Below are positions 2,314 through 52,676 of a DNA stretch of 64,000 nucleotides, piece after piece (the stretch's first letter is position 1; the number at the start of each line of letters is the position of its first letter). This stretch comes from Macrostomum lignano (Eukaryota), in contig NIVC01003708.1 in the NCBI GenBank assembly GCA_002269645.1, positions 17,469-81,468 of the forward strand, given 5' to 3'. The position numbers were made by a program, and so were the translations under genes. Below the pieces are notes generated by a model. That model saw nothing but the letters and a program-made list of their open reading frames with translations, did not search any database and was not told the origin of the DNA.

Positions 2314-3661
2314 CTCGGGATTTCAAAAGATTTAAGGATCGAAAATTAAAATATTCGATCTCGCAATTGAAGTTCTTATCATAGTACTTAAAGTAGCAGT
2401 CCTAAAATTTTAGAAAAAATGAGGTTTTTTGCTGATATTTGAATCAGGAAAATGGATATACCGACAGACTTTTAATTATCAGCGGTATTTATATTTTTAT
2501 TACTTAATTATTAGCCAAAGCAAAAACTATCAGTAGCGAAGAAAGTTTCAGACGCCACGTCAAAAATCCAGTTACCACAAGAACCTGAAAAATAAGCTTC
2601 AAAATAAAAGTTTAGCCCTTGAATCCCCGGCCAAAAAGATCTCAATACTGAATCTCCGGGGTCAACAGCATCAGCTCAAATTCGACAAAGACATAGAACA
2701 CCAGAAACCTAAAAAAACAATTCATAATGTCAATCAAATGTGACAGACATAAGGTAATGAAGCATGGGGTTGAAATCAAAACTATTTTAGCTTCTATCAC
2801 AATAAACTTATCTGTTACAGTGTACTATAATGCTATTGGAAAAGTACATACTAAGTGGGGGTACTTTTAAATAGCAGCAGTCTCAAAAGACTGGGATTGT
2901 TAAAAAATGAAATTATGACAGCAGAGAATGAAAATATGATTTACCAGTTCGACACTTTGATTAAAGTAATGGACGAAAGCACAGGTGATAACAGCGATTA
3001 TAATAAGTAGTTATGGAACTTAATATCTATTAATTTTTCAGAATAAAAAACAAAAGCTACTAAAGGCCAAAAGCATATAAAGTTTACAAAAAAGGCGTAA
3101 ACAAAGAATTTTCACTGTGCAGCAGACAATAAAACGCTTTAAAAAAGAATTAATAAAACAACACAAGACCAGATACCAATAAAAGGGTTAATAATAGGGG
3201 ACTGCAAAACAGAAATCCAAAAAGGAAACAATTTTAAGCTTTTACCAACAAAATGGACAAGAACATCAAAACCTAACGATTAATAATTGTTGTCGCATGT
3301 GATTCCTGCTCTATTTGACTGATTGATTCAAAATCTGTTTTAGTTGACAAGTTGTAGTGTCAATAAAACTAATTCAGAATGGTCAGTAAATTATAAAAGA
3401 TTGGTATATTTTGGTAAAATTTTCTACTTTCAGTAGTAAGTTTCGTCTCAGAGCGTACCACTCAAAGTGGTAATAAGTACCAGTGAATTTTCAAAACTTA
3501 TCTGCATAAAATTCAACTTAAAAACCTTCAGAAACTTACTTCACATTTCATAGCTTGAAATGAAATCTGTAGCACAGGGATAGACACACAAATCCAGCTA
3601 CCCAATAGTATATGAGTCTTGTCAACAATGATATCTCTTAGCACATAGCATCTAAGCTAGT

Positions 3662-6600
3662 TCACTTCCTTGGCTGGTGAATATTGTGAGCTGGCGGAGC
3701 ATGCGGTTTCTCATGCTTTGGCACAGGCTTATCGTGATAAGCTTTCACAGCATCAGGTGTAAAAGCTTTGTCTTCTTTAACCAAGCTGCCAGCCACCACT
3801 TGGCCTTGCTTGGCCTCATCAACTTCTGTGCCATATTCAGCTTCCTGCTTGCGAAGCTCTTCAGCGTTGAGCTTCTCGCCTGAGCCAGAGCTGGTGTTGC
3901 GGGTCCGATGACCAGCTACGCGCATGTTGCCCACCTTGGCTGCATTTGAAAGGCAAATGGGTCAAGTTTGGAAATGTGTTTGAAACTATTTTAATCATTT
4001 CTACTACTATTACACATTACAAAGTTTAAGGCAATTCAAATTAAGTCAGGCTGAATAATTTTAATAAACTGTCCTAAAAAACTGGCTAAAGTTCTTTTTT
4101 TATTTATCACCTAATTTACTCTGTTTTTTTTTTAATCCAAATATTTTTTCTGTAAAAGCCAATACTGTATGATGTAATAGAGAAAAAAAGGCAGTAGTCT
4201 TTGTCCAGTCAAAACTCTAGAAGTTACTACTTTTCTAAGTTTTAATAATCCAGGTTAATCAGTTTGAGCTTAGAAAATATACTAAGTAATTTAAATTTTA
4301 TGTTGACTTATAGAGATATTGTTCTTGTACTTTAGCAAAATTAATCACAAGACTTAATTGTCTTGGTTTTATTAAATCACCAAAGAAACCTTAGCAAAAG
4401 AAACATTTTTATGCTTTTTTTATGCACAAGTTTTTATGCTTGAAGCTAATAGGCATTGAAATGTTTTATCTTTTGGTGCTACATACTCATACTCACTAAT
4501 ATAGCTATTTTTATGACATAGCATAAGACTGAAATAACTGATATTATGTCAACTAATTAAAGTAGGGTCTAACTAATCTCCACTCTATTACTATAAGTAG
4601 GCACTTTAAGTAAGGCTCATAAGTAGGTATTTTTGTTACAAATCTTATTTTGTGTTAAAATCCTTGTCTAAATTTTGTTTTATGTTGTCCCTGCCAATTA
4701 CAATATACTACCCACCATATCATTATTATAAAAAGGCTTTGTCTGACGCGAAAATAAACCAACTTGTGGCAAGGCCCAGTTTGCTTCTAGCTTACCTCTT
4801 TTGCTAAAGGAAATTTCTGCTGATAGCTGGTCTTTGCTTATTTGGTTCTAATTTTAGAAATAGGGATAAAAACTATAAAGGCAACAAAGGTTGTATAGAC
4901 CTAGAAATAAGGATAAAAGCCATAAAGGCGACAGAGGTTATATAGACCCAGAAATAGGAATAAAAGCCATAAAGGCAACAGGTTGTATGGACCTAGAAAT
5001 AGGGATAAAAGCCATAAAGGTGACAGAGGTTGTAAAGACATATAAGTAGAGATAAAAGCCTTAAAGGCAACAGAAGCTGTACAGGCTCAAGGGGTACTAA
5101 GAAGGCCATAAGATTAGGCATTAATATTAGGCATTAGAAGGCAGACAAATATTAGGTATTAGTGCTTGTCACTGGGCACCCTTGATCCCTGGGAATGCTA
5201 TAATTTTGGACTTAGTTTAAATTAGACAGTGTCTTACTGCTCAGGCACTCATAGCTACCATAAGATTTCCAAGAAATCAAGTAACTTTAGGTAACTCTAA
5301 GAACTGTAGACCTAGAACAACTTGGAAACATCAATAAGACAATTTTAGAGGCAGAACAAATAAACTATAACAACTTGGTGGCACAACAATATTTTATAGA
5401 CAAAGAAAAGAAATACCAATACAACTTGGTGACATCAGAGATACAAGGCTGAAGGCATTGAAGAGAATCATAGAAAGATGGAGTTGCTAGCTAACTTAGA
5501 CTTGGCAATGGCATTTGCTGCTGTGCAGCAATTCAATCTGCTAGAAGATCTAGAGTATGATGATTTTAGGGAACAAGTGATTGAGAGATTTGGTGGGATA
5601 TGAAACGCATTGGAATTTGGAGAAGAATTTAGAGGCCATATGCAGGAAAGAAATAAGTTGAAGGATGCTTTCACCAATGCACTAATTGAATTGTCAGCTA
5701 GGGCCTTTCCGAATATGATCAAGGAGCAGAGAAAGGAAGAGATAAAAGCAAATTCATCAAAGGAGTCAGAATTCTGCCAGATACTAGGGAAAATTTAATC
5801 TTTGCTTAACCTGTAAATTTGCAAGAATCTAGGCGAATGCTATAGTGAATTGAAGCCAAAGGAGATGTACAAATAATTAAGGATGAAGCAAATGAGCATG
5901 AAAAGAAGCTCCAAAAGTTAGTGAAACAGCAGAGAGGTGAACTAGAGCAACAGCAGAAGCTGATAGAGGAACTTAGGGCAAATAGGCCATTGTCTATGGC
6001 ATGGCCTCAGCCATTCCTAGCTCAGATGCCACAAAAAACAGCTCACCAACCACCGGCATTTCAGCTGCAAATTCTAGCCTAGGCTAAGGGGGCAATTCAA
6101 TACTAGCTTATATGCTCTGCAACCAGGAAAGTGTGCAGTCTATTAGCATTTCGGCTCAATAAGACCTGGTTTTAGTCATCAGTGCCGCTTGCCCCAAAAC
6201 TAGCCTAAGCAGGGAAACTAAAGTACAAAGGCCACAACCTTCTAGGAAAAGTAGTTTTGAAATGAAGGCCTTCAATTATAGTAGTTATGTTGACTTAAAA
6301 AGTAGGCAAATAGTCCCAATGCAAAGAAGACACATGTTAGTGTACCTATAAATAATGCATTTGCACTAGCATCAACACCTACTTTTTCTGCATCAGCACC
6401 TTATGCCTCTGCACTAGCTGCATCACCATGTGTCACCCCTGCATTTGCTGCTACAAACCTTGCATCAATACAAAAAGAATAATTTGTACCCAAATTTCAC
6501 CAACCAAAGCCAAAAGTAATTAAACTTTAATTAAACAAAAGTAGCTAAAAGAATTTCTTTTGTACAGCCACAATTGCGATAATATATTAGGTATGGAATT

Positions 6601-9600
6601 GTTTAAAGAGCATTGTGAAAGCATCCATTTAGCCAAAGGCATGTTAATTCTAAAGGAGAAGACTTGTGTTCCCATGCAGTACACTCATTTGCCAGTAAGA
6701 GTATGCCAAGTATATACTCAAAAGAGAGCAGTTGTTCTGTCTTATAATGCACTACAAATCCCCATGAGATTATCTAAGAATTCAAAAGCTAATTATGGCA
6801 TGCCAATGACTATTGAGACTATTGGAATTGGAAGTATAAGAACTAAGAGCAAAGCATTAGAAATGAATCCAACCTTAGTTACTATGCGCAATGGTATAGC
6901 CATAGTAGAAGTAGTGAATTGAAGCATGGTAGAAATACAGTTGCCAAAATTGTTGCTGGTAGATCTAGCTAAGCCAATGAGAGCCAGAGAGCTTACGTAT
7001 ATGACTAGTGAATTAGATCAAACTGTGCCACCAAACTAGCTAATCACTGGATGTGTCAATCAAATGCAATCTCAAAGTGAAACTTGGATTAGCAAAATCA
7101 ATATTAGTGAAACCTTGATAGCAGAGCAGAAAGAGAAAGTGATTCAGCTTATAAAAGAGCATAGAGCTTTAAAGAAACCGTTTTGTAGCACAATTTAGAT
7201 ATGGGCTTAACATTGTTAGTCACGCATGAGATATTATTGAAAGATAAGACACCTGTGAGGATTCCAACTAGAAGAATCCCTCTTCATTTCCAAAAACAGG
7301 TGAATGCTCAATTAGACAATATGTTAGCTAAGAATTTAATTAGGCCATGCTATTCAACTTATGCAACACCTTTAGTAATTGTATATCTAAGAAGGATGGT
7401 ACTATTTGAATAGTGACTAGAGTGTTGAATTCATGAGTAAATTATTTTCTATATCCACTGTCAAATATTCAAGAGACATTTTGTATTTAACAGGCAGTCA
7501 ATACTTTAATAGCCTTGACCTAAATTCTGATTTTTGGCAAGTTTAAAAAAAGGAACACAAATAAGTTTAAGTACAAAGTTATGGGTCAGGGCTTATCTAA
7601 TATCTGAGGTACTTTTCAAAGATTAATGAATCTTGTATTGGCAGGCATTCAGCATAAATATTCCATGTCATACATAGAAAGCATAGTGACCTATTCTAAG
7701 AAATTCAAAAATCATTTAGAATACCTAAAAGAGGTATCTCAAAGATTGATTAATACTGGACTGAAACTAAGAGAAAAAAGCGCAATCTGTTCCATAGCAA
7801 ATTAAAATATTTAGGCCATGTAATTAGAAGAAATGGAATCAGGACTGATGAAGCTAAAATAGAAGCAATTAGAAGTTGGCCAAAGCCAAAAGATGCAAGA
7901 GTTGTGAAGTTTCTTAGAAAGAATTGCTCTTTTCTAAAAGAGTTGCTTGTTGTGGCATCATTGCTTAATGATTTTAAGAAAAATGCTTATTTAAAGCTTG
8001 GAATCCCTAATGAAAAGATCCATTCAGTGAAAATTGTTACTTTCAATAGATATGTCATTGATGATGACAATCTCATCCCTGAACTAGCCAAAGAGGATAA
8101 GTTCTAGTTATTCTACACAATGAAAAATAGTTACAAAAGCAGCTAGGTACTGAGATAGCAACTGGTGACCCTGGCCTTATCAATTGCCAATTGATTGAGG
8201 CAATCACCAATTGCCTCAGCTGCAATCAGCATGGTAACCCCCAAATGCACTATTGCTAAAAGGGAGGACAAGCCAAAAACATTGCTAGCATAGCTAAAGT
8301 GGCCTAATGTGTATTCTCTTCCACAAATATACAAGCTTGCCAAGGCTTTGTGTGGGCTTTGGTAACAACTGCAAAATTTGCTGCTAACTGCTAACAACTG
8401 CAAATGCAAAATTTGTCAATTAGTTAATAAAGTAAATCATGGACAAAATTTTTGTAAAATATAAGCAAATCAATGATCTTTATCTATAATCTGTAGAAAT
8501 CAACTATGTATGCTAAGCTATTACATTAATATTTCCATCATTAAAGGACTATTCTCCTGATGGATGCCACTTCTAGGCAGTTAAAGTCTGTTGTTAGCTT
8601 AAAGAGTTTTGTAGCAAAATTCTGCCTGAGCATCAAAGCCTACTGATTTTTCAAATGCAAGCTAAGCATAGGTGGAGCAAGCATAAACTAAGCATTGCTA
8701 TGCTGTCAAAAATGCCAGTTTTTCTATAGCTGCTTAGGATGGCAGTGATAAGGAGAATACAGCGCGTTTGCGCAAAATTCAATATCCATTTCCAGGTTTT
8801 TCCAGGTTCAAATAAGTAAAGCTCCAGGTTGCTACATGGTGGAGCTTTAAAAAATCAAATGTATGTACGCAGCAATGTTTCTTGATTTAGTGTTTCCTAC
8901 TACAAACTATATATTATATATTTCATAGATTATTTAGATTATTTATTTCTTGTATTAACTGAAGAACAAAATTAAAAGTATAAAATAAAAGACTTTTGCT
9001 ATAAATATACAACTTAATAAGAATATAACTATATAGGATAGATTGTATTTGTAACATACTATGACATGGTAGCAACATTTTTTAATACCAAAGTTTCTAT
9101 CACATCATATAGCATTATGGCATGCATTACTAAATTATAGTCTACTACCAGTCTCACATTACACAGATCATGGGAAGAATGATAATTCCAGATTTCCCCT
9201 CCCTCATTGGTATATTTCCAGGTTTTTTCTTCTGTCTTGGGGCATTTCTGGTTTTTTTGCAATTCCAGGTTTTTCCAGGTTGCAGACACCCTGAGAATAA
9301 GAATCAACATTGATGAGGAAGAGCATACCAGAGAGATAGATTACAACTAAGCCAAAACATTGCAAAGTCATGCTTGAGGATGACAACTATTAGTGTTGCA
9401 GCCAAAAGCATATTGCAACAATGAAGATGCAAGAATCACTATTCCTACTGCTCATGAACAGTGTAGGCTAAAGCTAAATGAAAAATGCATTCGTTTGATA
9501 TCTACAACATTCTCAATGAAATGCAACTATGCTTATATTTTTCCTATGCATATCTTGCAATGTCAAGAGCTATCAGTTCTAGAAGAGCTTGAGTTGTACT

Positions 9601-12600
9601 GGCCACTTAAGTTGCCCATGGTAATTGTTCAGGAATGCACTCTGATGATAGAAGCCTATTAACCAAAAGCAAACTGCTAACTATATTCTGCAAAAGTCAT
9701 CTAAGATTGTAATTTGCAATGTAAAGGCTGCTTTGTTAAAAGTATACAAAAAGTGGCATTGCTTTTCAAAACTTCAAATTTTGTAAGGCTTGCTTATCTT
9801 TTATAGACATAGAAGAGTAGCTCCAAGTGGCTATTCTCTTACTTTTGGGCTGGCTAAGGATTGATCTAAATGCTATCTTCAAGGACAATTTTCCAGTTTG
9901 AGCCATTAAAGATGGCTTCAAGAGTGGCAAGTTAGATGAATAGAGCCAATCTATTATTTGAGACACTTATAGATACCATTATTATTTTTGTTCTAGTGTT
10001 CATTGCTTTTAACTTGCAGTATATTTTTATTCTCAAGCCATTCCTTGAATTCATTGAGGTAATGGCAAAGCTGCATTGACAGCATTGTCAAGCTATATGC
10101 AGTGATACTATATCTTTGCTTGCTGCATTTTGCTAATCATGCTTTATTTGTTGCTAAATGATAATGCTAGTGCCTATAGTTTGCTGACATAAAGTAATAT
10201 TTCTACAATCATTTATTTAATTCTTAACAATACATCACATCCATAAAAAACTAGGGATTCAATTCAAAGCAAAATAGCTCTTTGGATAAGGTCATATTTA
10301 TGTTCCCTCTATGTTCAAGCCTGTACTGAAAACACTAGGTTTTATGCCCTGAATATGTGCCATAATACCTTCAGCCTTTCTTTTGCAAATGTCTGCTTGG
10401 CCATAGTTAACTTTATATTTATTATTTTACTCATTTTAAAGTGGTATGCCTTTAGTTAGGCTTTTGTGCTCAATACAGGCAAATGAAATAGTCTATGATT
10501 ATACTTTAGTTAAAAGTACTAGCAATCCAGTCCATTTGATGAGTGCAAAAATGAAAATGAAAATATGGCTAAAAACATTAAAGAATGGACCCATGGTTCC
10601 AGTAAGCCTTGACATCTTAGCAATTCCCCCAGCTGCAAGCCTTGACATCTTAGCAACTCTCCCAGTAAGCCTCAACAATCCCTTGTAAGCCTCGACATCC
10701 CAGCAATTGCCCCATAGGCCTTAACATCCTAGCAATTCCCGTTGTAAGCCTTGATACCCCAGCCATTTCCTCCGTAAGCTTTGACATCTCAGCAATAAAG
10801 GAAACTCATTTCTTTTAATTTTGTGTTAATTTATATTACATTAGTTTGTTTCCAATCTGTCACTTCTATTATATTAAATTTATTGTTTTATAACATTTAA
10901 TTATATTATTTTGCTTAGCAAAATAATTGTTCTTTAAAAAACATATCAAACACATTTTACTAATTATGCCATTAAGAAAACCTTTGTTAGGAAAGCATTT
11001 GCAAATTGCAGCAAATTGCAAATTGTAAAGCTTTTGCAGAGGAGAAAGGAGAGATGAAAGAGTAAATGGAAGAGGAGAGAGGAAAAAGATGAGATTGTAG
11101 AGATGAGAGAGAGAGAGATGAGTAGAGATGAGAGATGAAGGAAGAGAGAGCAGAGTGCAGAGAGACGAGAGAAGAGAATATAGGGGAGAGAGTATAGTAG
11201 AGGGAAGAAAAGAGAGGAGTAAGGAAAGAGAGGAGTCAGAAGAGGGGAAAGAGAAGAGTACACAGTAGAGAGGAGAGTAGAGATGACAGAGAGAGGGGAA
11301 TGAGAGAGCAAAGATGAGAGTGAACAGACGATATAAGAGAGAAGAGGAGAAGAGAGGGGAGTGGAGAGAGAAGAGAGAAGACAAGAGAGGGAGAGAGTAT
11401 AGAAGAGAAGAGTAGAGATGGGAAGAAAGAAGAAAGGAAAGAGAGTCCTGAGTCAAAAAGGGGAAAGAGAGGAGTACAAGAGAGAGGTGAGAGAACATAT
11501 GAGAGTAAAGATGACACATGAGAGAAAGGAGATGAGAGAGCAGAAACGAGAGTGAACAGACGAGAGATAGGAGAGTAGAGAGAAAAGAGGAGAGACAAGA
11601 AATAAGAGATGAGAGATGGAGACAAGGGAGAGATGAAAAGTGAGTGAAGAGAGAGGAGGGGAAGGGAGAGAATCTAGAGGACAGGGGAAACTGATGAAAA
11701 GGATGAGAGAGGAGAGGAAAGAGGGGAGAGATTAGAGAGAAGAGAGATTGGACAGGAGAGAGCAGAGAGATGAGAGGAGAGAGAGAGGGGGGGAGAGAAG
11801 AGAGAAATGAGAAAAGATAAGAGAGAGAGAAGATAAAAGAAGAGAAATGAGCAATAAGAGAGCAAAGACGAGAGAGAAGGGAGGTGAGGGAAGAGACGAT
11901 AGAAGAGATGAGAGAGTGGACAGAGGAGAGAAGAGTGGAAAAATGAGAGTTAAGAGAAGAGAGGAAAAAGGAGAGAGTAGAGATGAGGGAAGTGTTGAGA
12001 GAGGGTAGAGTAAGGAGTGAGAAGAGGAGAGAGGGAAGAGAGAGTAGAGAGCAGAGAGAAATGAGAAGAGATAAAAGAGGAGAAAGGAGATATAAGAGAC
12101 CAGAGACCAGAGAGGAAGAGAGGAGAGGAGAGAAAAAAAGAATAGAGAGAAGAGAGGAGAGGAAAGAGGACAGAGGAGAGAAGAAAGAAGAGATAAGAGG
12201 AGAGAGAGAGAGAAGAGACGAGGGAGAAGATAGGAAACAGAAAAGAAGATGGAAGTTTCAAAGGATGCAAAGATTCAAAGATTTTAGAGAGAGGCAGAAG
12301 TAGAGGTCAGAGTTTGCCTGACATTCTGCCCACTGTGCGCAGCACCCCAGCCAACAATATCAATGCTTGCTTCAAATCCTAATTTTACACGAATGTAAAC
12401 TCTATTCATCCTAACTATTAACAAGTTTTTGTTTGAGTTTGACCTCAGATTTCAGAATACACGCAAAAATAATTCCGGGGAATGGAGTTCCCTGGGTTCA
12501 AAATCCGTGGGTTTCAACAGCTTATATATATATATATCAAGGACTTAAGAGTACCAATCAAGCTTAAGAGTCAAGCTTAAGAGTACCTATATGCACAGTT

Positions 12601-13696
12601 TTTATTACAAATATACTTGATTCAAAAAAGGAACAGCACAAAAAGTTTGGCTAATGCCACTTGTGAGTATTTGCAACTTTGGGCTTATGAAATGAAGTAA
12701 AAACAACATGAAAATGAAAACTTCAATACACAGCTATATGAAAATATAATAGAGTAACATGTTGTGCATGTTAAATTAAAAGAATGGTAGTCTTCACTGC
12801 CCCAGATCAAATACAATCACTGCTTTTGTGACAAAAAACTGATTTTTTCCTATCTCCGCAGTGTATTTTTTCCAGGAAATCGTGGCCTCTAAAAAATTGC
12901 ACGATCTTTGAGTTTTACGTCCTGTTAGTCTAGAAGTCCTTGATATATATATAGAGATAAATAGATCCTTTTAATCTATTTATATATCAATATATAAATG
13001 CTGCAGACCTTACATTATGGACCTTCTAAGGACCTTCTTTTGGACCTTCACAAATCACAATGTAGTAGCTTTAGTTGTTATTAGAATAGAACTAACATTC
13101 ATTAGACTATTGGTTATTTGCCACAATTCTTTTATTTGGCAAAGAGGCAATCTTGCTCATAGATAATAAAATTGGACAGCCAAATCAATACTCTATTCAT
13201 CCAACTTATGTTGCCAAGCCATAAGAATTCTAGATAATAACCTAGATTAAGAAGGGAAAGCTTTTTTATGTATACATAACTAGGCCAAGATGGGAATAAT
13301 GGTAAATTTATCAATGAAATGCATCTCAACAAAATTGAATATTCTGCTAGAAATATTTTCGGCATTTGCAATGCAATGCCTGTCATTGTCAATTAAGGTG
13401 TTAGGAGTGGTATTCACCAAAGAGTAGGCCCTAATGATTGCAAAATAAACCCATTTTTGGGTAAAAAATCAGGCATTCTGCTTGTAAAGTATAAAAACCT
13501 ATAGAAGTAGCATGCCATAGCCTTTTCAATATCATATTATTCTTATTCCTAGCTTTAGCCTGGCCCTGCTATATTTGGAAATAGAAGATAGGCCTAAGCA
13601 GCATGGACCATCGACATAGATAGGGTAGGGAAACGACCCTAAAATCTTACCAGCAGGTGCGTGTCCCGCTTTGAACTCGGTGTTGTTATCCTCCAT
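3662..13696 (-). CDS. DAP1: Death-associated protein 1 (DAP1 family), 2 exons: 13651-13696 and 3662-3939, 107 aa
   Basis: Exon 1 encodes MEDNNTEFKAGHAPA + G|GTAAG; acceptor TGCAG|CC gives A-KVGNMRVAGH...KEDKAFTPDAVKAYHDKPVPKHEKPHAPPAHNIHQPRK*. This matches the DAP1 hallmarks KAGHPPAVKAGGMR and the terminal HIQQPRK; splice phases agree. Confidence 0.92.
4856..5090. repeat. About 47-bp degenerate tandem repeat (AGAAATAGGGATAAAAGCCATAAAGGCAACAGAGGTTGTATAGACCT), about 5 copies; possibly within the LTR/5' region of the decayed gypsy element
   Basis: Direct reading; placement in an LTR is inference. Confidence 0.75.
5420..8110 (+). mobile_element. Heavily decayed Ty3/gypsy LTR retrotransposon (gag-protease-RT remnants) inside the DAP1 intron
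   Basis: Broken ORFs retain motifs: protease C-terminus ILGMELFKEH; RT start HEILLKDKTPVRIPTRRIPLHFQKQVNAQLDNMLAKNLIRP; YFNSLDLNSDFWQV; YKVMGQGLSN..FQRLMNLVL; KYLGHVIRRNGIRTDEAKIEAIRSWPKPKD. PBS-like TTGGTGACATCAG near 5425. Many stops and frameshifts; no paired LTR found. Confidence 0.85.
8140..8700 (-). mobile_element. Second decayed reverse-transcriptase-like fragment, opposite orientation
   Basis: Minus-strand remnants FKLTTDFNCL and FSYASNVFGLSSLLAIVH...LNQLAID lie in the order expected for RT motifs; very degenerate. Confidence 0.4.
8760..9293. mobile_element. MITE-like non-autonomous DNA element with imperfect CAG...CTG termini and TTCCAGG subterminal repeats
   Basis: Left end CAGCGCGTTTGC versus reverse complement of right end CAGGGTGTCTGC; AGAATA flanks both sides (8754-8759, 9294-9299). 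Confidence 0.55.
10580..10797. repeat. About 30-bp degenerate tandem repeat (AAGCCTTGACATCTTAGCAATTCCC...), about 7 copies
   Basis: Direct reading. Confidence 0.8.
11038..12305. repeat. About 1.27-kb GA-rich polypurine low-complexity tract
   Basis: Almost exclusively G/A on the + strand; the ORFs it creates are L/S/F- or R/E-rich artefacts. Confidence 0.95.
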
Positions 13697-14250
13697 TTTT
13701 AAAGCGTTATCAATAAGAAACTTATTTAATAAGGTGCAAGGCGTTTAACTATTAGTGACAGCAGCGCTATGTAACATGCAATGCGATGCGATAAATAAGT
13801 TGAATATCGAATTTACTACTACTTAAATGAAAAGTATTAATGTTGTGTCGTCTTGACCTAAAAAATCCAGGTAATACTATATCCTATGTAGAATATGTTT
13901 TGCAATTCTTAGTAACTAACAAATATATATTATTTCATTCGTTAAAGTTTGTAAATTTTAAATTTAAAATCGTTATCTAATTCGAGCGTAGTGGCAGTAC
14001 GTACAGTAGTTGGTTGTGTTGGGCCGGGTTGGTTGGTGGCTATGGCACACACAGTGTATACTATTGACTTCTCGACTAATGAATGATGTGTTAGCCAGAT
14101 CGGATTCAGTTGTTAAATACTACCTTCCTGACATTGTGATATTAATATGAAACAACTTTTCTTTACTTTTTGAACGTGTTTGTGAACCTTCGTATATTTC
14201 GAGCCAAATTTTGCCATTTTGGGCATAGGGACATTAAAATTAATGACAGT
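13600..14250. promoter_or_regulatory. CpG-retaining island containing DAP1 exon 1; likely divergent promoter for DAP1 (-) and the ENT gene (+)
   Basis: CpGs are frequent here and nearly absent on both flanks; the genes are head-to-head. TSSs are not determinable from sequence. Confidence 0.55.
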
Positions 14251-15185
14251 CTTCTAGTTTGTTTTCAATATTTTTTTCAAGTTTAAATCAGTCCCACCAC
14301 ATAGTGCCTCTAAGCATTAGATGGAGTGGTTGATAAAGTAAATGGATAGAGGTAGGATGATATCTATTTTTGAGATTTTTAGATTTTTGAGACTCAAGAT
14401 CTATTAGGCCTATTTTACAATATTCAAGATTTGATCAAGATTTGAGTTTAAGCCTAAGACTAGGCCTAGACATAATTATTACCTAGTCCTACTACTACTA
14501 GGCCTATTTACACTATTTTATCTATATTAGTGCTAATATTGTTATTTGTTAAATATGTTAGGCCCCTAGGGTTAGGGATAGGGTTAGGCTAGACCTTAAT
14601 AATAGGCCCTAATTGAAGAAAAACAATTCTTTTTTATTTTTAGCTTGTTAGTAACTTGATATATATCAAATATAAATATGATAATAGACAATAGTTTAGT
14701 CACCAAGAGTACCAGATATTTTGGTGACAAATGGTCATTTTAATGACAAGTTGCTTCTTACCAAATCCAAATGCAGACATACTTGACCTATGAGATTCTA
14801 TAAGTTTGTTATTTTAGTGACATAAGGCACTTCATAATATTATGAATTGTATATGTTTTGTATATAAATATTAAAATAATATTCAAACCAATGTATTAAT
14901 ATTTCATTTTTGTGCAGATAATTTTGAATATATATATATAGGGCCTAACACAATTTCTTTATATATTAATATTTTTATATAAACATAGCTTATGGCAAAT
15001 TGACAATTGTTTTCAACAGATTTATATGCATATAAGCCTTTAGTCTCATTATATGCATCCTATTTTATTTTTATTTTTAGTAAGTACACAAGGATAGTAA
15101 AACTTTTTCTAGTAGTCCTTTATATTTCACTTAGCAAATGCACTAAGTTTAACCTATTTTTTTATTAAAAGCAGGGAGCTGTATG

Positions 15186-15498
15186 GCACACTTTAAGCGA
15201 TATAAGCATATAACCGGCGAGATACATTACTGCCCATTCCGCCGACTCCCCTGAGCAGGCATACAAGTGTGCGGATACGTACGCAGGCACACACTCACAC
15301 AGGAGTGTACAACGGCCCTAACTTTATTTTATCCTTAGGCATGTACACTTCACTGTGCCTTGGGGGTTGGCTCTCAACGCTGTTAATTGCACGAGCAGAG
15401 CCAAGCCGAGATTCCAATTCAGCCCCAAATTAATGTGACTACACTTGGAATCAAGCTTGGGTCACTGGCATACCAGAGCTTGTGCTAGATCGCTAGGC
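15186..15498 (-). mobile_element. tRNA-derived SINE family 1, copy 1 (CpG-decayed)
   Basis: Homologous to 34419-34682 and 63641-63996; minus-strand head GCCTAGCGATCTAGCAC...GCTTGATTCC resembles Pol III A/B boxes. Confidence 0.75.
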
Positions 15499-16663
15499 TA
15501 TGGCCCCCTAAGTTTAACCCATAGTTTGGATCAGGCTATGTGCATGCTCATACATGCGCAACTTCCAAAACTTGGTCAGCCATGCAACTTAGTTTTAACA
15601 AAAATGCAATGGAGTTTTTGGCTAAAAAATGCAACTTACATGTAAAAGAAACCCTAAAGCAAAATTAATGCAACTTTGTATAAACAACAGGAGTAACTAT
15701 AACTATCTTATTAAGGCAAAAGCTGCGTTATATACAAATGTACTATTTGGTTATTTATTTTGGTGGTCATTTTTGCAACTTACCTTGGTTGGCTGCCAAA
15801 TCAGTTGGTCAGATCGGCTGACTCATGTATGTGCATGTTGCGCATGTATATGCATGCCCAAACAAAAATCAATAGTTACAAATGGACCCCACAAAAAATT
15901 GTGCCCATTCTTAAAACTCTGCCAGTAAATAAATAATTTTTTATTATTTTTTTCTCTAAGGCTCTGTGATCACTTTTCTTCCAAAAACCTTTTTAATATT
16001 AAAAAGTATATAATAAAAATCACAATGCTAAAATATTAAAACCTAGCAACAAGCTCACTTGATTGCTTAACTATGAGTGTATTAAAAAACTAAATGCCTT
16101 ATCATCTAAATAGTATCCATCTATTTTTGGGTAGGCATTTTATGACTAACCTTTATTGGGCCCCTTGCTAGTTGGCTGGATTGACCAGCTTGGCTGGGTG
16201 TTGCGCATGTTTGTTGCTTGCCCTCCCTACCTTGATCTCTCATTTCCTAGCTCACTTATTGCTTAAGAGTTGCTTTTAATTTGAATACATTGTTCTTCAG
16301 CCTAACCTAATTACCTTAACTGATAAATTCATCCACTGACCATAATTGACAACTACCCTTTCTTTACAATAGATTGAACCTTTTGTTTGCCCAAATAATT
16401 TGAACCTATTATAAACTTAAGCTAATCAAGCCTTTATTTGGAACAGCTCCCAGTTATATTCTTTGTAGGATAACATTGTGAGATTGTGAGCATCAAATAC
16501 AGTGGTCTGTAAGTTAATATCATATGATGCATATGTTCAACTCACTTTTTCATTTTGTTGCAAAAAATTGTTTGTGGTTAAAGTCAACTTTCATTTTTCT
16601 TTGTTATTTCTCATTAAGCGTAACTTGACTTCATGCATTATTAAACCAAGTTGCTGAATCAGC

Positions 16664-19573
16664 ATGGATCTTGACGACAGTACTGTACTACCAGATAAGA
16701 AGCTTATCCCTGCTGATCCCAATGCTGATGACAGCCAGCAGGGAGATAAGGAGCCAACTCCTGAGGCAAACAAAAATGGCAATGGCATGGCAAAAGGCCA
16801 GACAGAAGAGTTGGTAGCCAATGAATTGCAAAATCTCGAAGTTGCCAGGCTGCTACAACCAGAGCCAGATACAAAGGTTCTAGATGATGACAAGCCACTG
16901 GAAGTTGGCGGTTCGGCACCCAACGATGTCTATTATACTGTGTTCATTGTGTTTGCACTGCACGGTATTGGCATCCTATTGCCTTGGAATATGTTTATCA
17001 ATGCCCATTCTTACTTTGTGGATTACAAGCTGTATACTAATGTGTCTGCTAATGCCGATTATCGCTGTAATTTTATGCATTACATTACACTGTCTGCCCA
17101 GCTGCCTAACATGCTAATGATGGCTTTTAATGTCTTCTTCCAACCTACTAAGCCGTCATTGAAGTCCAGCAACGATGTGCGCAAACTGATGCTTGTTATT
17201 CTAATTGAAATTGGCATCTGCTTGTTCACTGTCGCTCTGGCTGTAGTAGATAGTAGCCAATGGCCTGCCACTTTCTTTGGCATCACCATTGCCTGTATTG
17301 TGTTGCTGAATTGCTGCGCTGGTGTGTACCAATCTTCTGCTTATGGCATGGCTGCTCTGCTGCCAATGGCCTACTCCAATGCTATCGTGCTTGGTAAGCG
17401 TTCTGTGCTTTTGTTTAGTGTTGCTCTGTGTTCCTCTGGTCATTCGGCGGGTTCCTATCCCATACACAGGCCATTCGGCGGGTTCCTATCCCATACACTT
17501 GTCATTCAGCGGGTTCCTATTCCAAAGACTGGTCAGTCAGCGGGTTCCTATCCCATACACTGGTCATTCGGTAGACTGTTACCATTTATTATGCTAATCA
17601 GGTAGGCCTAAAGGTTTAAAATTGTACGCATTTCATCTGCATCCATCCCTATCCGTCACCAGGAAACAACGTATCTGGCACAGTAATTAGCTTGGTTAAT
17701 TTAGCCAGCAAAGCCGCTTCAAGTCTCAACCTGCAGCTGACGGCAATTCTATACTTCTCGGCCGCTGTTATCATCCTGCTAATCTGCTTTGGTTCGCTGT
17801 TTCTGCTACCAAAACTCTCATTCTACCAGCACTACCAAGCCAGGGAGTTCGAAATTCCCATGCTAGAATTTGACGAGACTGCGAATAGCAATGGCAAGCC
17901 TGATGGCGGCAACGGCACGGTTTGCGAATCCGCGGAGCCGACTGTTGTTGTGGTGGACGTTGGCGGCGACGGCTGCTGCGACGACTACAGCAATACGGCT
18001 GTTGAATGCTGCGCACTGTGCTGTCTTAGGGGCGGCGACTCTAAGCTGGTCTGCAGCCGGTTAGTTAAAAACCAATGCTTCTACTCATGCTCTCATAGTC
18101 TTGTGAAATTCACAGATCGAAAACTTTCAAGATCCAACTCTCCCAGATCCCTGTTTTTTTAGCAGCCAATTCTCCCAGATACTCGATTGCTGGGCCACCG
18201 TCCCAGATCCCCAGTTTCTGAGCCACCCTCCCAGATCCTCAGTTGCTGGGCCACCGTCCCAGATCCTCAGTTGCTGGGCCAGCCTCCCAGATCCTCAGTT
18301 GCTGGGCCAGCCTCCCAGATCCTCAGTTGCTGGGCCAGCCTCCCAGATCCTCAGTTGCTGGGCCAGCCTCCCAGATCCTCAGTTTCTAGGCCAGCCTCCC
18401 AGATCCTCAGTTGCTGGGCCAGCCTCCCAGATCCCCCAGTTGCTGGGCCACCCTCCCAGATCCTCAGTTTCTGAGCCACCCTCCCAGATCCTCAGTTGCT
18501 GGGCCAGCCTCCCAGATCCTCAGTTGCTGGGCCAGCCTCCCAGATCCTCAGTTTCTAGGCCAGCCTTCCAGATCCTCAGTTGCTGGGCCAGCCTTCCAGA
18601 TCCTCAGTTGCTGGGCCAGCCTCCCAGAGTGTCAGTTGCTGGGCCAGCCTCCCAGAGTGTCAGTTGCTGGGTCAGCCTCCCAGAGTGTCAGTTGCTGGGC
18701 CAGCCTCCTAGAGTGTCAGTTGCTTGGTCAACCTCCTAGAGTGTCAGTTGCTGGGTCAACCTCCCAGAGTGTCAGTTGCTGGGCCAGCCTCCTAGAGTGT
18801 CAGTTGCTGGGTCAACCTTCCAGATCCTCAGTTGCTGGGCCACCTTCAAGATCCTCAGTTGCTGGGCCAGCCTCCCAGATCCTGAGTTGCTGAGCCGGCC
18901 TCCCAGATCCTGAGCTGCTGAGCCAACCTCCCAGATCCTCGGTTGCTGGGCCAGCCTCCCAGATCCTCAGCTGCTGTTTAAACCATCGCATATAATACCC
19001 GTTCCATATTTCATTGTCCACAGCTACTGGCATCGCTATTGGGAGGCCTTTCGTCACTGCTGGGTCCACTGCGTCAGCGTTTGGTGCGTCTTTTTCTGCA
19101 CCCTGGCCTGTTTCCCGGCGCTTCAGGCCACCATTGAGCCGGTGACCCTGCTAAGCCTGAAGGACTGGTTCGTTGACATCTTCGTATTTCTATTCTTTAA
19201 TCTCTTCGCCATGCTTGGCAGCCTGGTGTCAACATTCTGGCAGTGGCCATCGCCTCGCTGGCTAGCCCTATGCGTTTGGCCTCGCCTATTGATCTTTGTG
19301 CCATTCTTCCTCATGTGCAACTGCTTCCCGGATAGCCGCGCCGTCATTCCGGTCCTGATTCGCAGCGATACCGCTTTCATATGCGGTATGATTGTCTTCG
19401 CTTTAACGTCGGGCTATTTATCCTCGCTGTGCATGATGTATGCGCCAAGGAGCGTGGCCGATCCGGAGAAGCACGCAGGCTTAGCCGCTATGCTTGCTGC
19501 GTTCTTTCTTGTATTTGGCGTGTTTACCGGCATCCTGTTTGGCACTCTGTTGAAGGCTATGTTCTTCGCTTAG
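16664..19573 (+). CDS. SLC29A: Equilibrative nucleoside transporter (SLC29/ENT family); coding exons 16664-17393, 17663-18059, 19024-19573; 558 aa
   Basis: ENT motifs FALHGIGILLPWNMFINAHSYF, NAIVLGNNVSGT, VFFCTLACFPA, FNLFAMLGS, QWPSPRWL, LTSGYLSSLCMMYAP, FFLVFGVFTG. Splice phases (1, 2) join into an open 1677-nt CDS. Confidence 0.93.
17427..17575. repeat. 31-bp tandem repeat (TGGTCATTCGGCGGGTTCCTATCCCATACAC), about 4.5 copies, in ENT intron 1
   Basis: Direct reading. Confidence 0.9.
18170..18975. repeat. 28-bp minisatellite (CCCAGATCCTCAGTTGCTGGGCCAGCCT), about 28 copies, filling ENT intron 2
   Basis: Direct reading; 28-aa periodic ORFs in all three frames. Confidence 0.95.
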
Positions 19574-19734
19574 AGTTTGTTGCCGCGGTGTTGAACACTT
19601 CGGAACCAGGTTGATTGAAAGTAGCTGGGCTCTGTTTTTTAGCTACAAAAGGACAAGCAACAACGGGGGTATTTCACACCAGTGTTAGAAAAAAGTGTTG
19701 AGAAATAACACTACAAAGGAGTCGTGTAACGGCA

Positions 19735-20340
19735 ACAAAACAATTATCCTTTACAATGGAACAATGATATTTCAACAACAAAACAATTATCTTTTACAAC
19801 GGAACAATGATATTTCAACAACAAAACAATTATCTTTTACAACGGAACAATGATATTTCAACAACAAAACAATGATATTTTACAACGGAACAATGATATT
19901 TCAACAACAAAACAATGATATTTTACAACGGAACAATGATATTTCAACAACAAAACAATGATCTTTTACAACGGAACAATGATATTTCAACAACAAAACA
20001 ATGATCTTTTACAACGGAACAATGATCTTTTACAACGGAACAATGATATTTCAACAACAAAACAATGATCTTTTACAACGGAACAATGATATTTCAACAA
20101 CAAAACAATTATCTTTTACAACGGAACAATGATATTTCAACAACAAAACAATTATCTTTTACAACGGAACAATGATATTTCAACAACAAAACAATGATCT
20201 TTTACAACGGAACAATGATATTTCAACAACAGAACAGTTATCTTTCAGGACAACAGAACAATGATGTTTTACAACAGCAATGTGTCACAACAGCAGAACA
20301 AGAACGTTTAACAATAAGAATGTTTAACAGGAACAGTACA
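19735..20340. repeat. 43-bp A/C-rich tandem repeat (ACAACGGAACAATGATATTTCAACAACAAAACAATGATCTTTT), about 11 copies, decaying to the right
   Basis: Direct reading. Confidence 0.9.
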
Positions 20341-21699: not shown

Positions 21700-21932
21700 T
21701 AAGCAGATGTGCAACCGACAGCTCAGCCGCAGCTATTGTGCGGGGCATCTGCAGGCTGCGTACGGCTGTTCAGTCCAAGGACTGGGGGTCACCACACACC
21801 CTGAATTACCACAGCTAATGCTGGTAATCCATTTTTATGTCTTGCTCAAGGACACAAATCGTCCAGAGTGGGTCGAGAACCGAATCCCCGACCTTTCAGT
21901 CGTGAGTCTGATGCTCCAATCATTGTTAGGCT
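21700..21932 (-). mobile_element. tRNA-derived SINE family 2
   Basis: Minus strand: tRNA-like head (AGCCTAACAATGATTGGAGCATCAGACTCACGACTGAAAGGTCGGGGATTCGG) followed by GTGTCCTTGAGCAAGACA, a motif typical after the tRNA head of invertebrate SINEs. Confidence 0.6.
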
Positions 21933-25995: not shown

Positions 25996-26007
25996 GCACG
26001 GGTGTGC

Positions 26008-49900: not shown

Positions 49901-51968
49901 CATAATTAGGCCTAATTAAAACCAAAGATAGGAACTATTTGCAATTGCAACAATTTTAGCTAAAAATTTCTATATAACTTATTTTTCCTTAAGTTTATAA
50001 ATCTTAGTAACAGTAACATATTATTTGTTTATTACCTTAAAATGGCAGCATAGGCAGAGAGATAAAAGAGGCTGCTGCCCCTAGATGACTATTTTCCTAT
50101 CCTCCTAAGAGGTGACCACCCTCTCTATTACTAGCTTTCTATGGGATGACCTACCATAATTTTTTTAGTATGAGCTCATTATATGTGTTTTTAAAGATTT
50201 TGGTATAATTTTCCATTCCGATTCTAAAAATTTGCTGGGAAAGAGGGGGACCACCCAACCTGCCAACCATTGCCCCCCTAATTTGAAGTGCTATGCCTAT
50301 ACTACTAACAACTTACCTTAGGTCTAATTTAGCTTTTTTAGCTTTTAGGTTTTTTAATATTGTAAATTTGTAAGTTGTGCTTGTATTTGCTATCTTAATT
50401 AATTGCAATTTGCTATAGTAATTATACTTCTCAATTTAACTAATAGTGTTGAACTTGTAATGTTAAAAAATTGTTAATCATGACCAAAAGGCAAAGTCTT
50501 TTTGCATTAAATGACTAAGTACTAAAGGTCTAATTGTACTAAAATACTTGGTCTTTTCATATATCTATTATTAAACAAAATATAGATATGTTCAACAAGT
50601 TTAGTTTTCTTTTTCCTTGCTATATAGACCCTAGTATTATTATTCTAATAGGGGCTTATATTATTTTTTGAAAATTCATATGGACTAATTTAATTGTAGT
50701 AATATAGATAGGCATAAGCTTTGGTCTATGACCTTAGATAAAAATATTCGCTCTGCAATATGGCTTTTAATAAACTTCTAGGCCTTTGCTAAATGTTAAC
50801 ATCAATGTTATAGCAAAGTTGATAATTTATTTATTAACAATCATAGTTTATTAATATTTTATTATGTTTTAAAATAGAAAAGTTTTTAAAACAAAAAAGA
50901 TATATAAAATCTGAGAGTAAGACTAAGTCTCAAATTTGCTTTTGATTTTGTTGGTTAATACTATTTTAAAATAATAACTATCTTTAATGTTTCATGATGT
51001 ACATAATATTTTTGTATCTTTCAGGCACCTTATCAAGTAAAAGTTAGTAAAGAAGTATATAACTAGTCTATTTGTGGCATCTGTCTCCTAACTGAGTCAC
51101 ATGGAACATGACTTCTTTCTTCAGGGTAGGGTAAGTTCTTTTTTTTAATTCAAGCATGTTCATTTTGAACTATTATTCAAATTAAATCATTTGTAAACAA
51201 ATGTTGTCAATGTGTATCATAGCAAACTTAAATTTGGTATTTCATTTTAAACCCTAAATGCCAAATTTATACCCTGTTCCCTGATGTTCTTTAATTTAAG
51301 TTCAGTATTTTTTAAACTTTTTCATTAAGTTAACTTTTTCATTTTTCATTTGAGAGAGAGACACTTAGCAATGTAGATTATGGAATGTAGAAAGAGATGT
51401 TAGTGTTTACTTTGATTTTTTAGTTATTTGACTGTTACCAAACAGCACTATCTAGCACTATCTAGTGATGTGACAATAACAGTTAAAATTAAATTGTATA
51501 TAATCCTGATATGGATTATTGATCTAAAATTTTCATTATTGCTATATTGTAGAACATAATCTACAGTAGTATCTGAATGTAAGAAATCCATTATATTTAA
51601 TGTTTATTCAAATATTATTTTGTCTAATTAATTTGTCCATTTTTTTATAGGTAGTTGATACAATTACATTCATTTCCTTTACTATTGGTGATATTGGTAA
51701 AGTTTTAAAAAATGTATTTCAGTTGGTTCATCTTGCTTTTGTGCTAACAGATATGGTTAAACAGAGAATTTTCTCTTGAATACCAGGGTTACTGAGTTTA
51801 CTGTAGACTCTGTAGGTTTGGGGTCTTACATTTATATGACTTTTACATCTTATATACTGGTTTGGTGTATTTTGCTTTACATTTTTTAAGCCTTCACAAA
51901 GCTATTCTAGCTAATCATTAATCCTAGTGATCTCATTGTGTGGTATATACTTATAGTACTATCACTGT

Positions 51969-52590
51969 CCTCCCAGATCCTTAGTCGCTGCGCCACCTAG
52001 ATCCTCAGTTGCTGAGCCTACCTCCCAGATTCTCAGTTGCTGGGCCAGCTTCCCAGAGTGTCAGTTGCTGGGCCAGCCTCTCAGAGTGTCAGTTGCTGGG
52101 CCAGACTCTCAGATCCTCAGTTGCTGGGCCAGCCTCCCAGAGTGTCAGTTGCTGGGCCAGCCTCTCAGAGTGTCAGTTGCTGGGCCAGACTCTCAGATCC
52201 TCAGTTTCTGGGCCAGCCTCTCAGAGTGTCAGTTGCTGGGCCAGACTCTCAGATCCTCAGTTGCTGGGCCAGCCTCTCAGAGTGTCAGTTGCTGGGCCAG
52301 ACTCTCAGAGTTTCAGTTGCTGGGCCAGCCTCTCAGAGTGTCAGTTGCTGGGCCAGACTCCCAGAGTTTCAGTTGCTGGGCCAGCCTCTCAGAGTGTCAG
52401 TTGCTGGGCCAGACTCTCAGAGTGTCAGTTGCTGGGCCAGACTCTCAGAGTGTCAGTTGCTGGGCCAGACTCTCAGATACTCAGTTGCTGGGCCAGCCTC
52501 TCAGATACTCAGTTGCTGAGCCAACCTCCCAGATCCTCAGTTTCTGGGCCAGCCTCCCAGACACTCAGTTGCTGAGCCAGCCTCTCATAT
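51969..52590. repeat. Second array of the ENT-intron 28-bp minisatellite family, about 22 copies
   Basis: Same CAGTTGCTGGGCCAG core with both GATCCT and GAGTGT subtypes. Confidence 0.95.
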
Positions 52591-52676
52591 CCAGGGCCGG
52601 AGCCGGCCTTTCAGATTCTCAATTTAAACAGGTCGCTAAAACTAACTGATTATCTATCTTCCTTCACCCCCTCAAG

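What the first reader, a model, noticed from the sequence alone, without database searches (positions are those of the whole stretch)
2700..17400. Sharp CpG mosaic: gene-body CpG deserts flanking a CpG-rich divergent promoter (DAP1/ENT)
Seen: by eye only about a dozen CpGs in 4900-8400, versus about 18 in 700 bp of equally AT-rich DNA at 28370-29080. CpGs return abruptly at about 13600-14250 around DAP1 exon 1, drop again through ENT exon 1, and return in ENT exons 2-3. Established: germline 5mC drives CpG-to-TpG/CpA loss, and invertebrate mosaic methylation marks the bodies of constitutive genes while sparing promoters. Inference: this is a fossil map of gene-body methylation. That is notable if the host is a flatworm, since the best-studied planarian and parasitic flatworms are reported to have little CpG methylation.
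Basis: partly seen in the sequence, partly recalled or inferred. Interest (0 to 1): 0.72.

Follow-up and report, generated by a model that had tools for sequence, protein, structure and literature searches.

The report
Methylation footprint around flatworm DAP1/ENT genes
In this piece of the Macrostomum lignano (free-living flatworm) genome, the DAP1 gene and the 5' part of the neighbouring nucleoside-transporter gene have lost almost all CpG dinucleotides while their shared promoter and the surrounding DNA keep them. This is the classic mutational footprint of germline DNA methylation over transcribed gene bodies, in a flatworm already reported to keep the methylation enzymes.

Summary
The DAP1 intron (3941-13649) has 42 CpGs against about 278 expected (o/e 0.14). 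The stretch 14251-15190 has none. The 600-bp DAP1/ENT promoter region (13601-14200) has o/e 1.19, and 19-50 kb has 0.92. GC-matched controls show the loss is CpG-specific, with a matching TpG/CpA excess.

The window is Macrostomum lignano, assembly GCA_002269645.1, contig NIVC01003708.1. Both gene models match annotated proteins at 99-100% identity.

New evidence comes from comparison with a paralogous copy on another contig (90-98% identical across aligned blocks). Transitions hit 36% of CpG-context sites inside the deserts, against 4.5% in CpG-normal DNA and 3% in the promoter. CpG hypermutability is therefore region-specific and acted after the copies diverged. The low-CpG domain runs from the exon 1/intron junction to about 950 bp past the stop codon, some 200 bp short of the only poly(A) signal. 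It includes non-TE intron sequence and ENT exon 1.

The 4900-8400 stretch is largely a decayed intronic Ty3/gypsy-like retroelement (about 5400-8100). TEs outside the domain keep their CpGs.

The best reading is a gene-body, 5'-biased methylation footprint. It is a known kind of feature. Reviews report that M. lignano retains DNMT1/DNMT3 with low 5mC, so interest is moderate. No 5mC data were available to me.

The parts
3645..3940 (-). DAP1 exon 2 (coding part, ends with the stop codon); CpG o/e 0.50
   Evidence: Translation; Pfam DAP E=2.6e-20; spliced model 100% identical to M. lignano PAA50148.1; CpG statistics.
2480..3644 (-). Putative DAP1 3'UTR; CpG o/e 0.39 over 2701-3644, rising to about 1 below roughly 2700
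   Evidence: The only AATAAA on the minus strand downstream of the stop is at 2496-2501. CpG profile. The UTR end is inferred, with no RNA data.
3941..13649 (-). DAP1 single intron, the main CpG desert (42 CpGs, o/e 0.14)
   Evidence: Splice junctions and the sequence; statistics (Poisson P=8e-70).
5400..8100 (+). Degraded Ty3/gypsy-like retroelement (gag-like, protease-like and RT remnants in several frames with many stops), antisense to DAP1; CpG o/e 0.14
   Evidence: Pfam RVT_1 E=2.3e-7 at about 7518-7790; frame translations; present in all paralogous copies; CpG.
13650..13696 (-). DAP1 exon 1 coding part (ATG at 13696)
   Evidence: the model matches the annotated protein.
13601..14200 (.). 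Undepleted patch (22 CpGs, o/e 1.19, GC 0.35) between DAP1 and ENT: presumed bidirectional promoter
   Evidence: HMM segment; CpG sites here differ between paralogs at only 1/32; the paralog L001 has the same patch. Promoter function is inferred from position.
14201..16663 (+). CpG-poor stretch upstream of the ENT start codon, probably a 5'UTR intron (donor-like site at 13869, strong acceptor at 16618)
   Evidence: The splice assignment is inferred.
15184..15498 (+). SINE-like dispersed repeat inside the desert, partly decayed (o/e 0.62, against 0.95 and 0.96 for the copies at 34414 and 63640)
   Evidence: 10 of 29 CpG-context sites differ from the paralog.
16664..17393 (+). ENT exon 1, CpG o/e 0.37
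   Evidence: Gene model, 99% identical to M. lignano PAA91711.1 over 558 aa.
17663..18059 (+). ENT exon 2, CpG o/e 0.96
19024..19573 (+). ENT exon 3 with stop codon, CpG o/e 0.95
49901..52600 (.). Second CpG desert (o/e 0.06), outside the finding's coordinates; its last 600 bp is a CpG-free minisatellite
   Evidence: Gene status unknown.

Best explanation
This is the mutational footprint of heritable CpG methylation laid over transcription units in Macrostomum lignano. In the cells that give rise to gametes, CpGs are methylated across the DAP1 transcription unit (from just inside intron 1 to about the 3'UTR end) and across the 5' part of ENT (the upstream intron-like stretch and exon 1). The shared 600-bp promoter is kept unmethylated. 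5-methylcytosine deaminates to thymine, so methylated CpGs decay to TpG/CpA several-fold faster than other C/G sites change. Neutral intron sequence, including an old intronic retroelement, has been driven to CpG o/e of about 0.13. Coding exons are held part-way by selection, and younger insertions are caught part-way. Neighbouring DNA (WSC-domain exons, NLR-like ORFs, a young LTR element, old SINE-like copies) is unmethylated and stays at o/e about 1. Shown here: the composition pattern, its sharp boundaries, and the region-specific CpG hypermutability. Inferred: that the cause is 5mC, that it is targeted by transcription, and the exact transcript ends.
For: 1. CpG loss is specific and GC-corrected: 0.13 vs 0.91 in GC-matched windows. 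TpG/CpA rises reciprocally (1.24 vs 1.05) and symmetrically between strands.
2. Boundaries are sharp at 100-bp resolution. The left edge of the undepleted patch (13600) lies about 50 bp from the DAP1 exon 1/intron junction (13649/13650), and its right edge is at 14200. At the far end, o/e returns to about 1 near 2700, roughly 950 bp past the stop codon and 200 bp short of the only poly(A) signal at 2496-2501.
3. Window vs paralog L001 (90-98% identity across aligned blocks): transitions at CpG-context sites are 25/70 (36%) in the deserts, 1/32 in the promoter and 41/904 (4.5%) in CpG-normal DNA. Desert vs normal gives OR 11.6, p=4e-14. Within the deserts, CpG vs non-CpG C/G is 36% vs 7% (p=3.5e-11). 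The effect holds separately for the DAP1 intron (11/26), the ENT 5' stretch (4/15) and the SINE copy (10/29).
4. A three-lineage polarised comparison of 3941-6640 shows 5 of 12 ancestral CpG sites lost by transition, against 8.3% of non-CpG C/G sites (p=0.002).
5. The depletion does not follow transposable elements. The same SINE-like family keeps o/e 0.95 and 0.96 at two sites outside the domain although the three copies are only about 73-76% identical, and has 0.62 inside it. The young LTR element has 0.85.
6. Tandem units inside the desert show CG/TG/CA variants at the same position (4855-5081 and 10600-10790).
7. The paralogous locus shows the same mosaic, and its lineage-specific insertions are intermediate.
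8. Reviews state that M. lignano retains DNMT1 and DNMT3 and has low-level 5mC (PMC9246332, PMC11292947, PMC10658182).
Against: No direct 5mC measurement was available. ENT is depleted only in its 5' part; exons 2 and 3 have o/e 0.95 and no excess CpG change, so the domain does not match that gene's full body. Only two depleted genes and a few undepleted ORFs are in view, and none has expression data, so the 'constitutive versus inducible' contrast is untested. Reported adult 5mC is 'low', which has to be reconciled with near-saturated decay here. Non-CpG C/G transitions are also 2-3 times higher in the deserts. The second desert has only a weak TpG/CpA excess.
Confidence: 0.8

Rival explanations
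1. TE-directed methylation rather than gene-body methylation. On this view the deserts are patches of old repeats that were methylated as genome defence, or that arrived already CpG-poor, and their position inside DAP1/ENT is incidental.
For: About 2.7 kb of the main desert is a degraded Ty3/gypsy-like element. M. lignano is repeat-rich, and I could not test the other intron segments against a repeat library.
Against: Depletion covers the whole intron, the 3'UTR region and ENT coding exon 1, and it begins about 50 bp from the DAP1 exon 1/intron junction rather than at the ends of the retroelement. TEs outside the domain are not depleted: the young LTR element has o/e 0.85, and SINE-like copies that are only 73-76% identical to each other keep 0.95. 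The SINE copy inside the domain is decaying.
Confidence: 0.1
2. A pure fossil. The lineage once methylated these domains, but methylation there has since been lost, and the pattern is only slowly relaxing.
For: Adult 5mC is reported as low (PMC11292947, PMC10658182). Composition alone cannot date the process.
Against: CpG sites in the deserts are still about 8 times more divergent than CpG sites elsewhere between paralogous copies that are 90-98% identical across aligned blocks. Younger insertions (the SINE copy and paralog-specific inserts) are partly decayed. The process therefore acted after the duplication. DNMT1 and DNMT3 are reported as retained.
Confidence: 0.07
3. A cause unrelated to methylation: local compositional or mutational heterogeneity, such as transcription-associated mutagenesis or AT-biased decay of introns, that happens to remove CpG.
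For: The deserts are AT-rich, and non-CpG C/G transitions are also raised there.
Against: GC-matched AT-rich DNA elsewhere has o/e about 0.9-1.2. The shift is specific to CpG, with a symmetric TpG and CpA gain and no strand asymmetry of the kind expected from transcription-coupled deamination. The raised GpC o/e and lowered ApC/GpT follow arithmetically from CpG decay.
Confidence: 0.03

Closest known systems
Invertebrate mosaic (gene-body) CpG methylation and its CpG o/e footprint, as described for Ciona, oyster, annelids, cnidarians and insects
   Same: CpG-depleted transcribed regions lie next to undepleted DNA. Promoters are spared. TpG/CpA is in excess. The depleted genes are of a housekeeping type and the undepleted ORFs are of an inducible or lineage-specific type. 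An intragenic TE is swept into the methylated domain.
   Different: The host is a flatworm, a phylum usually cited for loss of DNA methylation. Depletion of neutral intron DNA is very deep (o/e 0.13, a vertebrate-like level). In ENT only the 5' part is affected. Methylation itself was not measured here.
Vertebrate global methylation with unmethylated CpG islands
   Same: Near-saturated CpG decay (o/e 0.1-0.2) flanks a sharply bounded undepleted promoter patch.
   Different: Most of this 64-kb window is undepleted (o/e about 0.9-1.1), so methylation is the exception rather than the default. The promoter patch is AT-rich (GC 0.35), not a GC-rich island.
5'-biased intragenic methylation of insects
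   Same: In ENT, and possibly in the unit at 49.4-53 kb, depletion is concentrated just downstream of the presumed promoter and fades towards the 3' exons.
   Different: DAP1 is depleted along its whole length, including a 9.7-kb intron. Insect footprints are usually exon-centred and shallower.

Membership tests
Mosaic gene-body methylation footprint | CpG o/e deficit over the transcribed region that survives GC correction | tested here: met
   0.13 vs 0.91 in GC-matched windows, p=1e-7. The DAP1 intron has 42 CpGs observed against about 278 expected.
Mosaic gene-body methylation footprint | Reciprocal, strand-symmetric TpG/CpA excess, with other dinucleotides not comparably skewed | tested here: met
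   TpG/CpA is 1.24 vs 1.05, p=5e-5, and all other shifts are 0.22 or less. TG and CA are about equal. The excess is weak in the second desert.
Mosaic gene-body methylation footprint | Promoter/TSS region spared; domain limits follow the transcription unit | tested here: inconclusive
   The spared patch 13601-14200 abuts DAP1 exon 1, and the DAP1 domain ends about 200 bp short of the only poly(A) signal. ENT is depleted only through exon 1. TSS and poly(A) sites are inferred without RNA data.
Mosaic gene-body methylation footprint | Elevated CpG-to-TpG/CpA substitution rate confined to the depleted domains | tested here: met
   36% vs 4.5% of CpG-context sites differ between paralogs, OR 11.6, p=4e-14. 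The promoter shows 3%.
Mosaic gene-body methylation footprint | Broadly expressed genes depleted, tissue-specific or inducible genes not (bimodality) | not testable with these tools
   DAP1 and ENT are low, while WSC-domain and NLR-like ORFs are high. This is only a handful of units, and neither expression data nor the genome-wide distribution was available.
Mosaic gene-body methylation footprint | Host encodes DNMT1 and DNMT3, and 5mC is present at the residual CpGs | not testable with these tools
   Reviews state that DNMT1 and DNMT3 are retained and that 5mC is low in M. lignano (PMC9246332, PMC11292947, PMC10658182). The primary paper (Wasik et al. 2015) could not be read. No methylome data were accessible.
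TE-targeted (genome-defence) methylation footprint | Depletion coincides with TE boundaries, and copies of the same family are depleted wherever they lie | tested here: not met
   The desert extends well beyond the retroelement. SINE-like copies outside the domain have o/e 0.95 and 0.96, and the young LTR element has 0.85.
Vertebrate-type global methylation with CpG islands | Genome-wide CpG depletion as the default state | tested here: not met
   19574-49500 has o/e 0.92 and 52601-64000 has 1.03. The 6 kb beyond the window start is also about 1.

The most novel reading that the evidence does not exclude
M. lignano, a member of a phylum usually described as having lost or nearly lost DNA methylation, may carry canonical and locally very heavy (vertebrate-level) methylation of selected transcription units. 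These would have razor-sharp promoter protection and 5'-biased spread, active in the neoblast/germ lineage. The reported 'low' adult 5mC would then reflect few methylated domains, or lineage-restricted methylation, rather than weak methylation. That would make M. lignano a tractable flatworm model (transgenesis and RNAi exist) for what gene-body methylation does in stem cells.
Probability: 0.35. Interest if true: 0.55.

Novelty: new member of a known kind. Interest (0 to 1): 0.4.

Why it matters
[quoted passage not shown] Later reviews group flatworms with the divergent, non-canonical spiralians (PMC11292947). This locus gives sequence-level evidence that M. lignano has the ancestral mosaic pattern: a methylated gene body, a protected promoter, and unmethylated lineage-specific ORFs and TEs. 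It also shows that the pattern has kept shaping mutation since the recent duplication of the genome. That fits loss of methylation within flatworms, in planarians and parasitic groups, rather than at the base of the phylum. It also names exact coordinates where existing or new methylomes can be checked. The phenomenon itself is textbook, so the value is taxonomic and practical rather than conceptual.

Tried and rejected
- Rfam scan of the whole window: no hits, so the CpG-bearing patch at 15184-15498 is not a known RNA gene. It proved to be a dispersed SINE-like repeat.
- Exact-protein look-ups of three window ORFs found nothing.
- The first homology search, with ENT exon 1 alone, gave only a 53% M. 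lignano hit and wrongly suggested a different species. The full spliced model found the 99% match.
- Loci L003-L005 were not exported to the scripting machine. They were brought in through one 4-way alignment. I did not extend that alignment over 6640-13650 because of output cost.
- Pfam on ORFs near the second desert found no family, so its gene context stays unknown.
- I considered testing CpG decay in the retroelement through Arg-codon fates against intact relatives. I dropped this because no close intact copy was available and the paralog comparison answers the question more directly.
- The raised GpC o/e in the deserts looked odd at first. I take it to be largely an arithmetic consequence of losing C and G through CpG decay; I reasoned this through but did not compute it.
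- The primary M. lignano genome paper could not be read.
Full report
**1. Observation**

A sliding-window scan shows an extreme CpG mosaic. CpG o/e is 0.00-0.17 in most 1-kb windows from 4001 to 11500 and 0.23-0.37 from there to 13500. It rises to 0.59-0.77 around 13000-14500, falls again, and is about 0.8-1.1 over most of 19-50 kb.

- 13 CpGs in 4900-8400.
- 19 CpGs in 28370-29080, at GC 0.32.
- 23 CpGs in 13612-14200.
- None from 14201 to 15197.

By annotated segment:

| Segment | CpG o/e |
|---|---|
| DAP1 intron | 0.14 (42 CpGs in 9.7 kb) |
| DAP1 coding exon 2 | 0.50 |
| DAP1 exon 1 plus intergenic patch | 1.17 |
| ENT exon 1 | 0.37 |
| ENT exon 2 | 0.96 |
| ENT exon 3 | 0.95 |
| 19574-49500 | 0.92 |
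| 52601-64000 | 1.03 |

The intron count has Poisson P=8e-70 against the window's own background. A two-state HMM on 100-bp bins places the low state at 4001-13600, 14201-15200, 15401-16900 and 49901-52600. The remaining low segments are four short minisatellites whose unit lacks CpG, plus 54101-54600, which I did not examine.

In GC-matched 500-bp windows with tandem repeats masked, CpG is 0.13 vs 0.91 (p=1e-7) and TpG/CpA is 1.24 vs 1.05 (p=5e-5). No other dinucleotide moves by more than about 0.2. TpG and CpA rise equally, so there is no strand asymmetry. The higher GpC and lower ApC/GpT in the deserts are what CpG decay should produce arithmetically. This is my reasoning, not a computation.

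**2. What is there**

DAP1 lies on the minus strand.
- Exon 1 is 13650-13696 and exon 2 is 3645-3940, with a single 9.7-kb intron between them.
- The spliced protein hits Pfam DAP at E=2.6e-20.
- It is 100% identical to M. lignano PAA50148.1.

ENT lies on the plus strand.
- Its exons are 16664-17393, 17663-18059 and 19024-19573.
- The 558-aa product is 99% identical over its full length to M. lignano PAA91711.1.

Locus L002, from GCA_002269645.1 contig NIVC01003708.1, is 100% identical to window 1-23696. The window is therefore the last 64 kb of that contig.

- It has gag-like, protease-like and RT remnants with many stop codons and frameshifts.
- Pfam RVT_1 matches at E=2.3e-7.
- It is present in all paralogous copies, so it predates the duplication.

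The small CpG-bearing patch at 15184-15498 is a SINE-like dispersed repeat. Other copies lie at 34414 and 63640.

CpG-normal DNA holds several features:
- WSC-domain exons.
- DUF4062/AAA/TPR NLR-like ORFs.
- A young LTR-type element whose 199-bp repeats are 99.5% identical.

**3. Direct test of CpG hypermutability**

The assembly holds diverged paralogous (probably homeologous) copies of this locus. They are L001 and L003 on contig NIVC01000077.1 and L004 on NIVC01001009.1. L005 is a near-identical duplicate of the window, at 99.97% identity.

I aligned the window to L001 in 13 syntenic blocks of 90-98% identity. I then classed every C/T or G/A difference by whether the C or G sits in a CpG.

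| Region | Transitions at CpG-context sites | Transitions at non-CpG C/G sites |
|---|---|---|
| Deserts, all | 25/70 (36%) | 7.1% |
| DAP1 intron 7878-13599 | 11/26 | 7.3% |
| ENT 5' stretch, SINE excluded | 4/15 | 5.3% |
| SINE copy 15184-15498 | 10/29 | 12.9% |
| Promoter patch | 1/32 (3%) | 5.3% |
| ENT exon 1 | 2/32 | 2.0% |
| ENT intron 1 end plus exon 2 (17572-18171) | 3/64 | 2.2% |
| ENT exon 3 | 2/78 | 1.8% |
| CpG-normal DNA 18977-27683 | 41/904 (4.5%) | 2.5% |

Within the deserts, CpG vs non-CpG gives p=3.5e-11. Desert vs normal at CpG sites gives OR 11.6, p=4e-14.

A polarised three-lineage comparison of 3941-6640 gives 5 of 12 ancestral CpG sites lost by transition. The figure for non-CpG C/G sites is 8.3% (p=0.002).

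Other observations point the same way.
- The paralogous locus shows the same mosaic, and its lineage-specific insertions have intermediate o/e.
- Inside the desert, tandem units at 4855-5081 and 10600-10790 carry CG, TG and CA variants at the same position.
- The SINE copy inside the domain has o/e 0.62. The two copies outside have 0.95 and 0.96, although the three copies are only about 73-76% identical.

**4. Gene body or TE?**

On the DAP1 side, the edges follow the transcription unit rather than the retroelement. The undepleted patch begins about 50 bp from the exon 1/intron junction. At the other end, o/e returns to about 1 near 2700. That is roughly 950 bp past the stop codon and about 200 bp short of the only minus-strand AATAAA, at 2496-2501. 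It then stays near 1 for at least 6 kb beyond the window.

Intron sequence with no recognisable TE match and coding ENT exon 1 are also depleted. TEs outside the domain are not. This favours transcription-unit methylation, with the old intronic TE simply included.

The stretch 14201-16618 is probably an ENT 5'UTR intron. There is a donor-like site at 13869 and a strong acceptor at 16618. This is inferred without RNA data.

ENT's 3' exons are not depleted. The domain is therefore either 5'-biased within ENT or a block centred on DAP1 that crosses the promoter. I cannot tell these apart (note 4).

**5. Mechanism**

The best-supported account has four steps.
- CpG methylation occurs in the heritable cell lineage over these transcribed domains, with the bidirectional promoter protected.
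- 5mC deamination drives CpG to TpG/CpA.
- Neutral sequence approaches equilibrium at o/e about 0.13.
- Exons are held back by selection, and younger insertions are caught mid-decay.

The composition, the boundaries and the rate contrast are shown. The involvement of 5mC, its targeting by transcription and the cell lineage are inferred.

**6. Comparison with what is known**

This is the classic invertebrate mosaic footprint. It is not the vertebrate global pattern, since most of the window is undepleted. It is not TE-targeted methylation, since that defining feature was tested and not met.

For flatworms, reviews state that planarians and parasitic groups lack DNMT1 and DNMT3. M. lignano retains both and has low-level 5mC (PMC9246332, PMC11292947, PMC10658182). 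[quoted passage not shown]

I could not read the primary genome paper, so I cannot exclude that it already describes gene-body methylation. My literature searches found no CpG o/e or methylome study of M. lignano.

**7. Verdict**

It is a new, well-documented instance of a known kind of feature. Interest is moderate at 0.4, mainly as a precise and testable lead on flatworm methylation.

Noticed in passing
window 49901-52600: A second CpG desert (o/e 0.06). It follows a CpG-bearing patch at 49400-49890 and precedes an ORF at 52677-52997 that has no Pfam match. It could be the first intron of another methylated transcription unit. Its TpG/CpA excess is weak.
   Followed up: partly
window 18172-18976 and 51969-52625: The same 28-bp CpG-free minisatellite (about 80-84% identical arrays) sits in ENT intron 2 and at the end of the second desert. 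Units at the array edges carry CG where the consensus has TG or CA.
   Followed up: partly
window 42464-45867: A young LTR-type element. Its 199-bp direct repeats (43179-43377 and 45351-45549) are 99.5% identical, and each adjoins a 30-bp minisatellite. The intact 417-aa ORF has a gag-type aspartyl protease domain, no RT was seen, and CpG o/e is 0.85.
   Followed up: partly
window 56276-56981: Two arrays of a 16-bp CGCG-containing unit (TTCACAACCGCGAAAC) lie in inverted orientation (56276-56668 forward, 56702-56981 reverse complement). Together they form a large imperfect palindrome with CpG o/e about 1.7.
   Followed up: no
window 11038-12235: A 1.2-kb purine-rich (AG) low-complexity block in the DAP1 intron. 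It is absent from the paralogous copy L001, and a similar block in reverse orientation lies at 46829-47098.
   Followed up: no
whole window: GpC o/e is high throughout (1.3-1.6, up to 2 in the deserts). The window is dense in minisatellites with 17-48-bp units, plus a (TATC)n run of about 196 copies at 41016-41800.
   Followed up: no
window 22895-33718 (+) and 32554-32985, 45897-48497 (-): Several WSC-domain exons, plus DUF4062/AAA/TPR ORFs that resemble an NLR-type gene. All lie in CpG-normal DNA. No gene was listed at 19.6-23.7 kb in the called-gene table returned for L002.
   Followed up: partly
L001, L003, L004, L005 vs window: The assembly holds at least three diverged lineages of the DAP1-ENT locus (about 94-96% identical in the DAP1 intron; 90-98% across blocks on the ENT side). 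It also holds one 99.97% duplicate (L005). This fits the reported (my recollection, not checked here) recent genome duplication of M. lignano and some uncollapsed haplotypes.
   Followed up: partly
deserts vs CpG-normal DNA (window vs L001): Transitions at non-CpG C/G sites are also 2-3 times more frequent in the deserts (7.1% vs 2.5%). Transversions differ by a smaller factor (about 1.4x).
   Followed up: no
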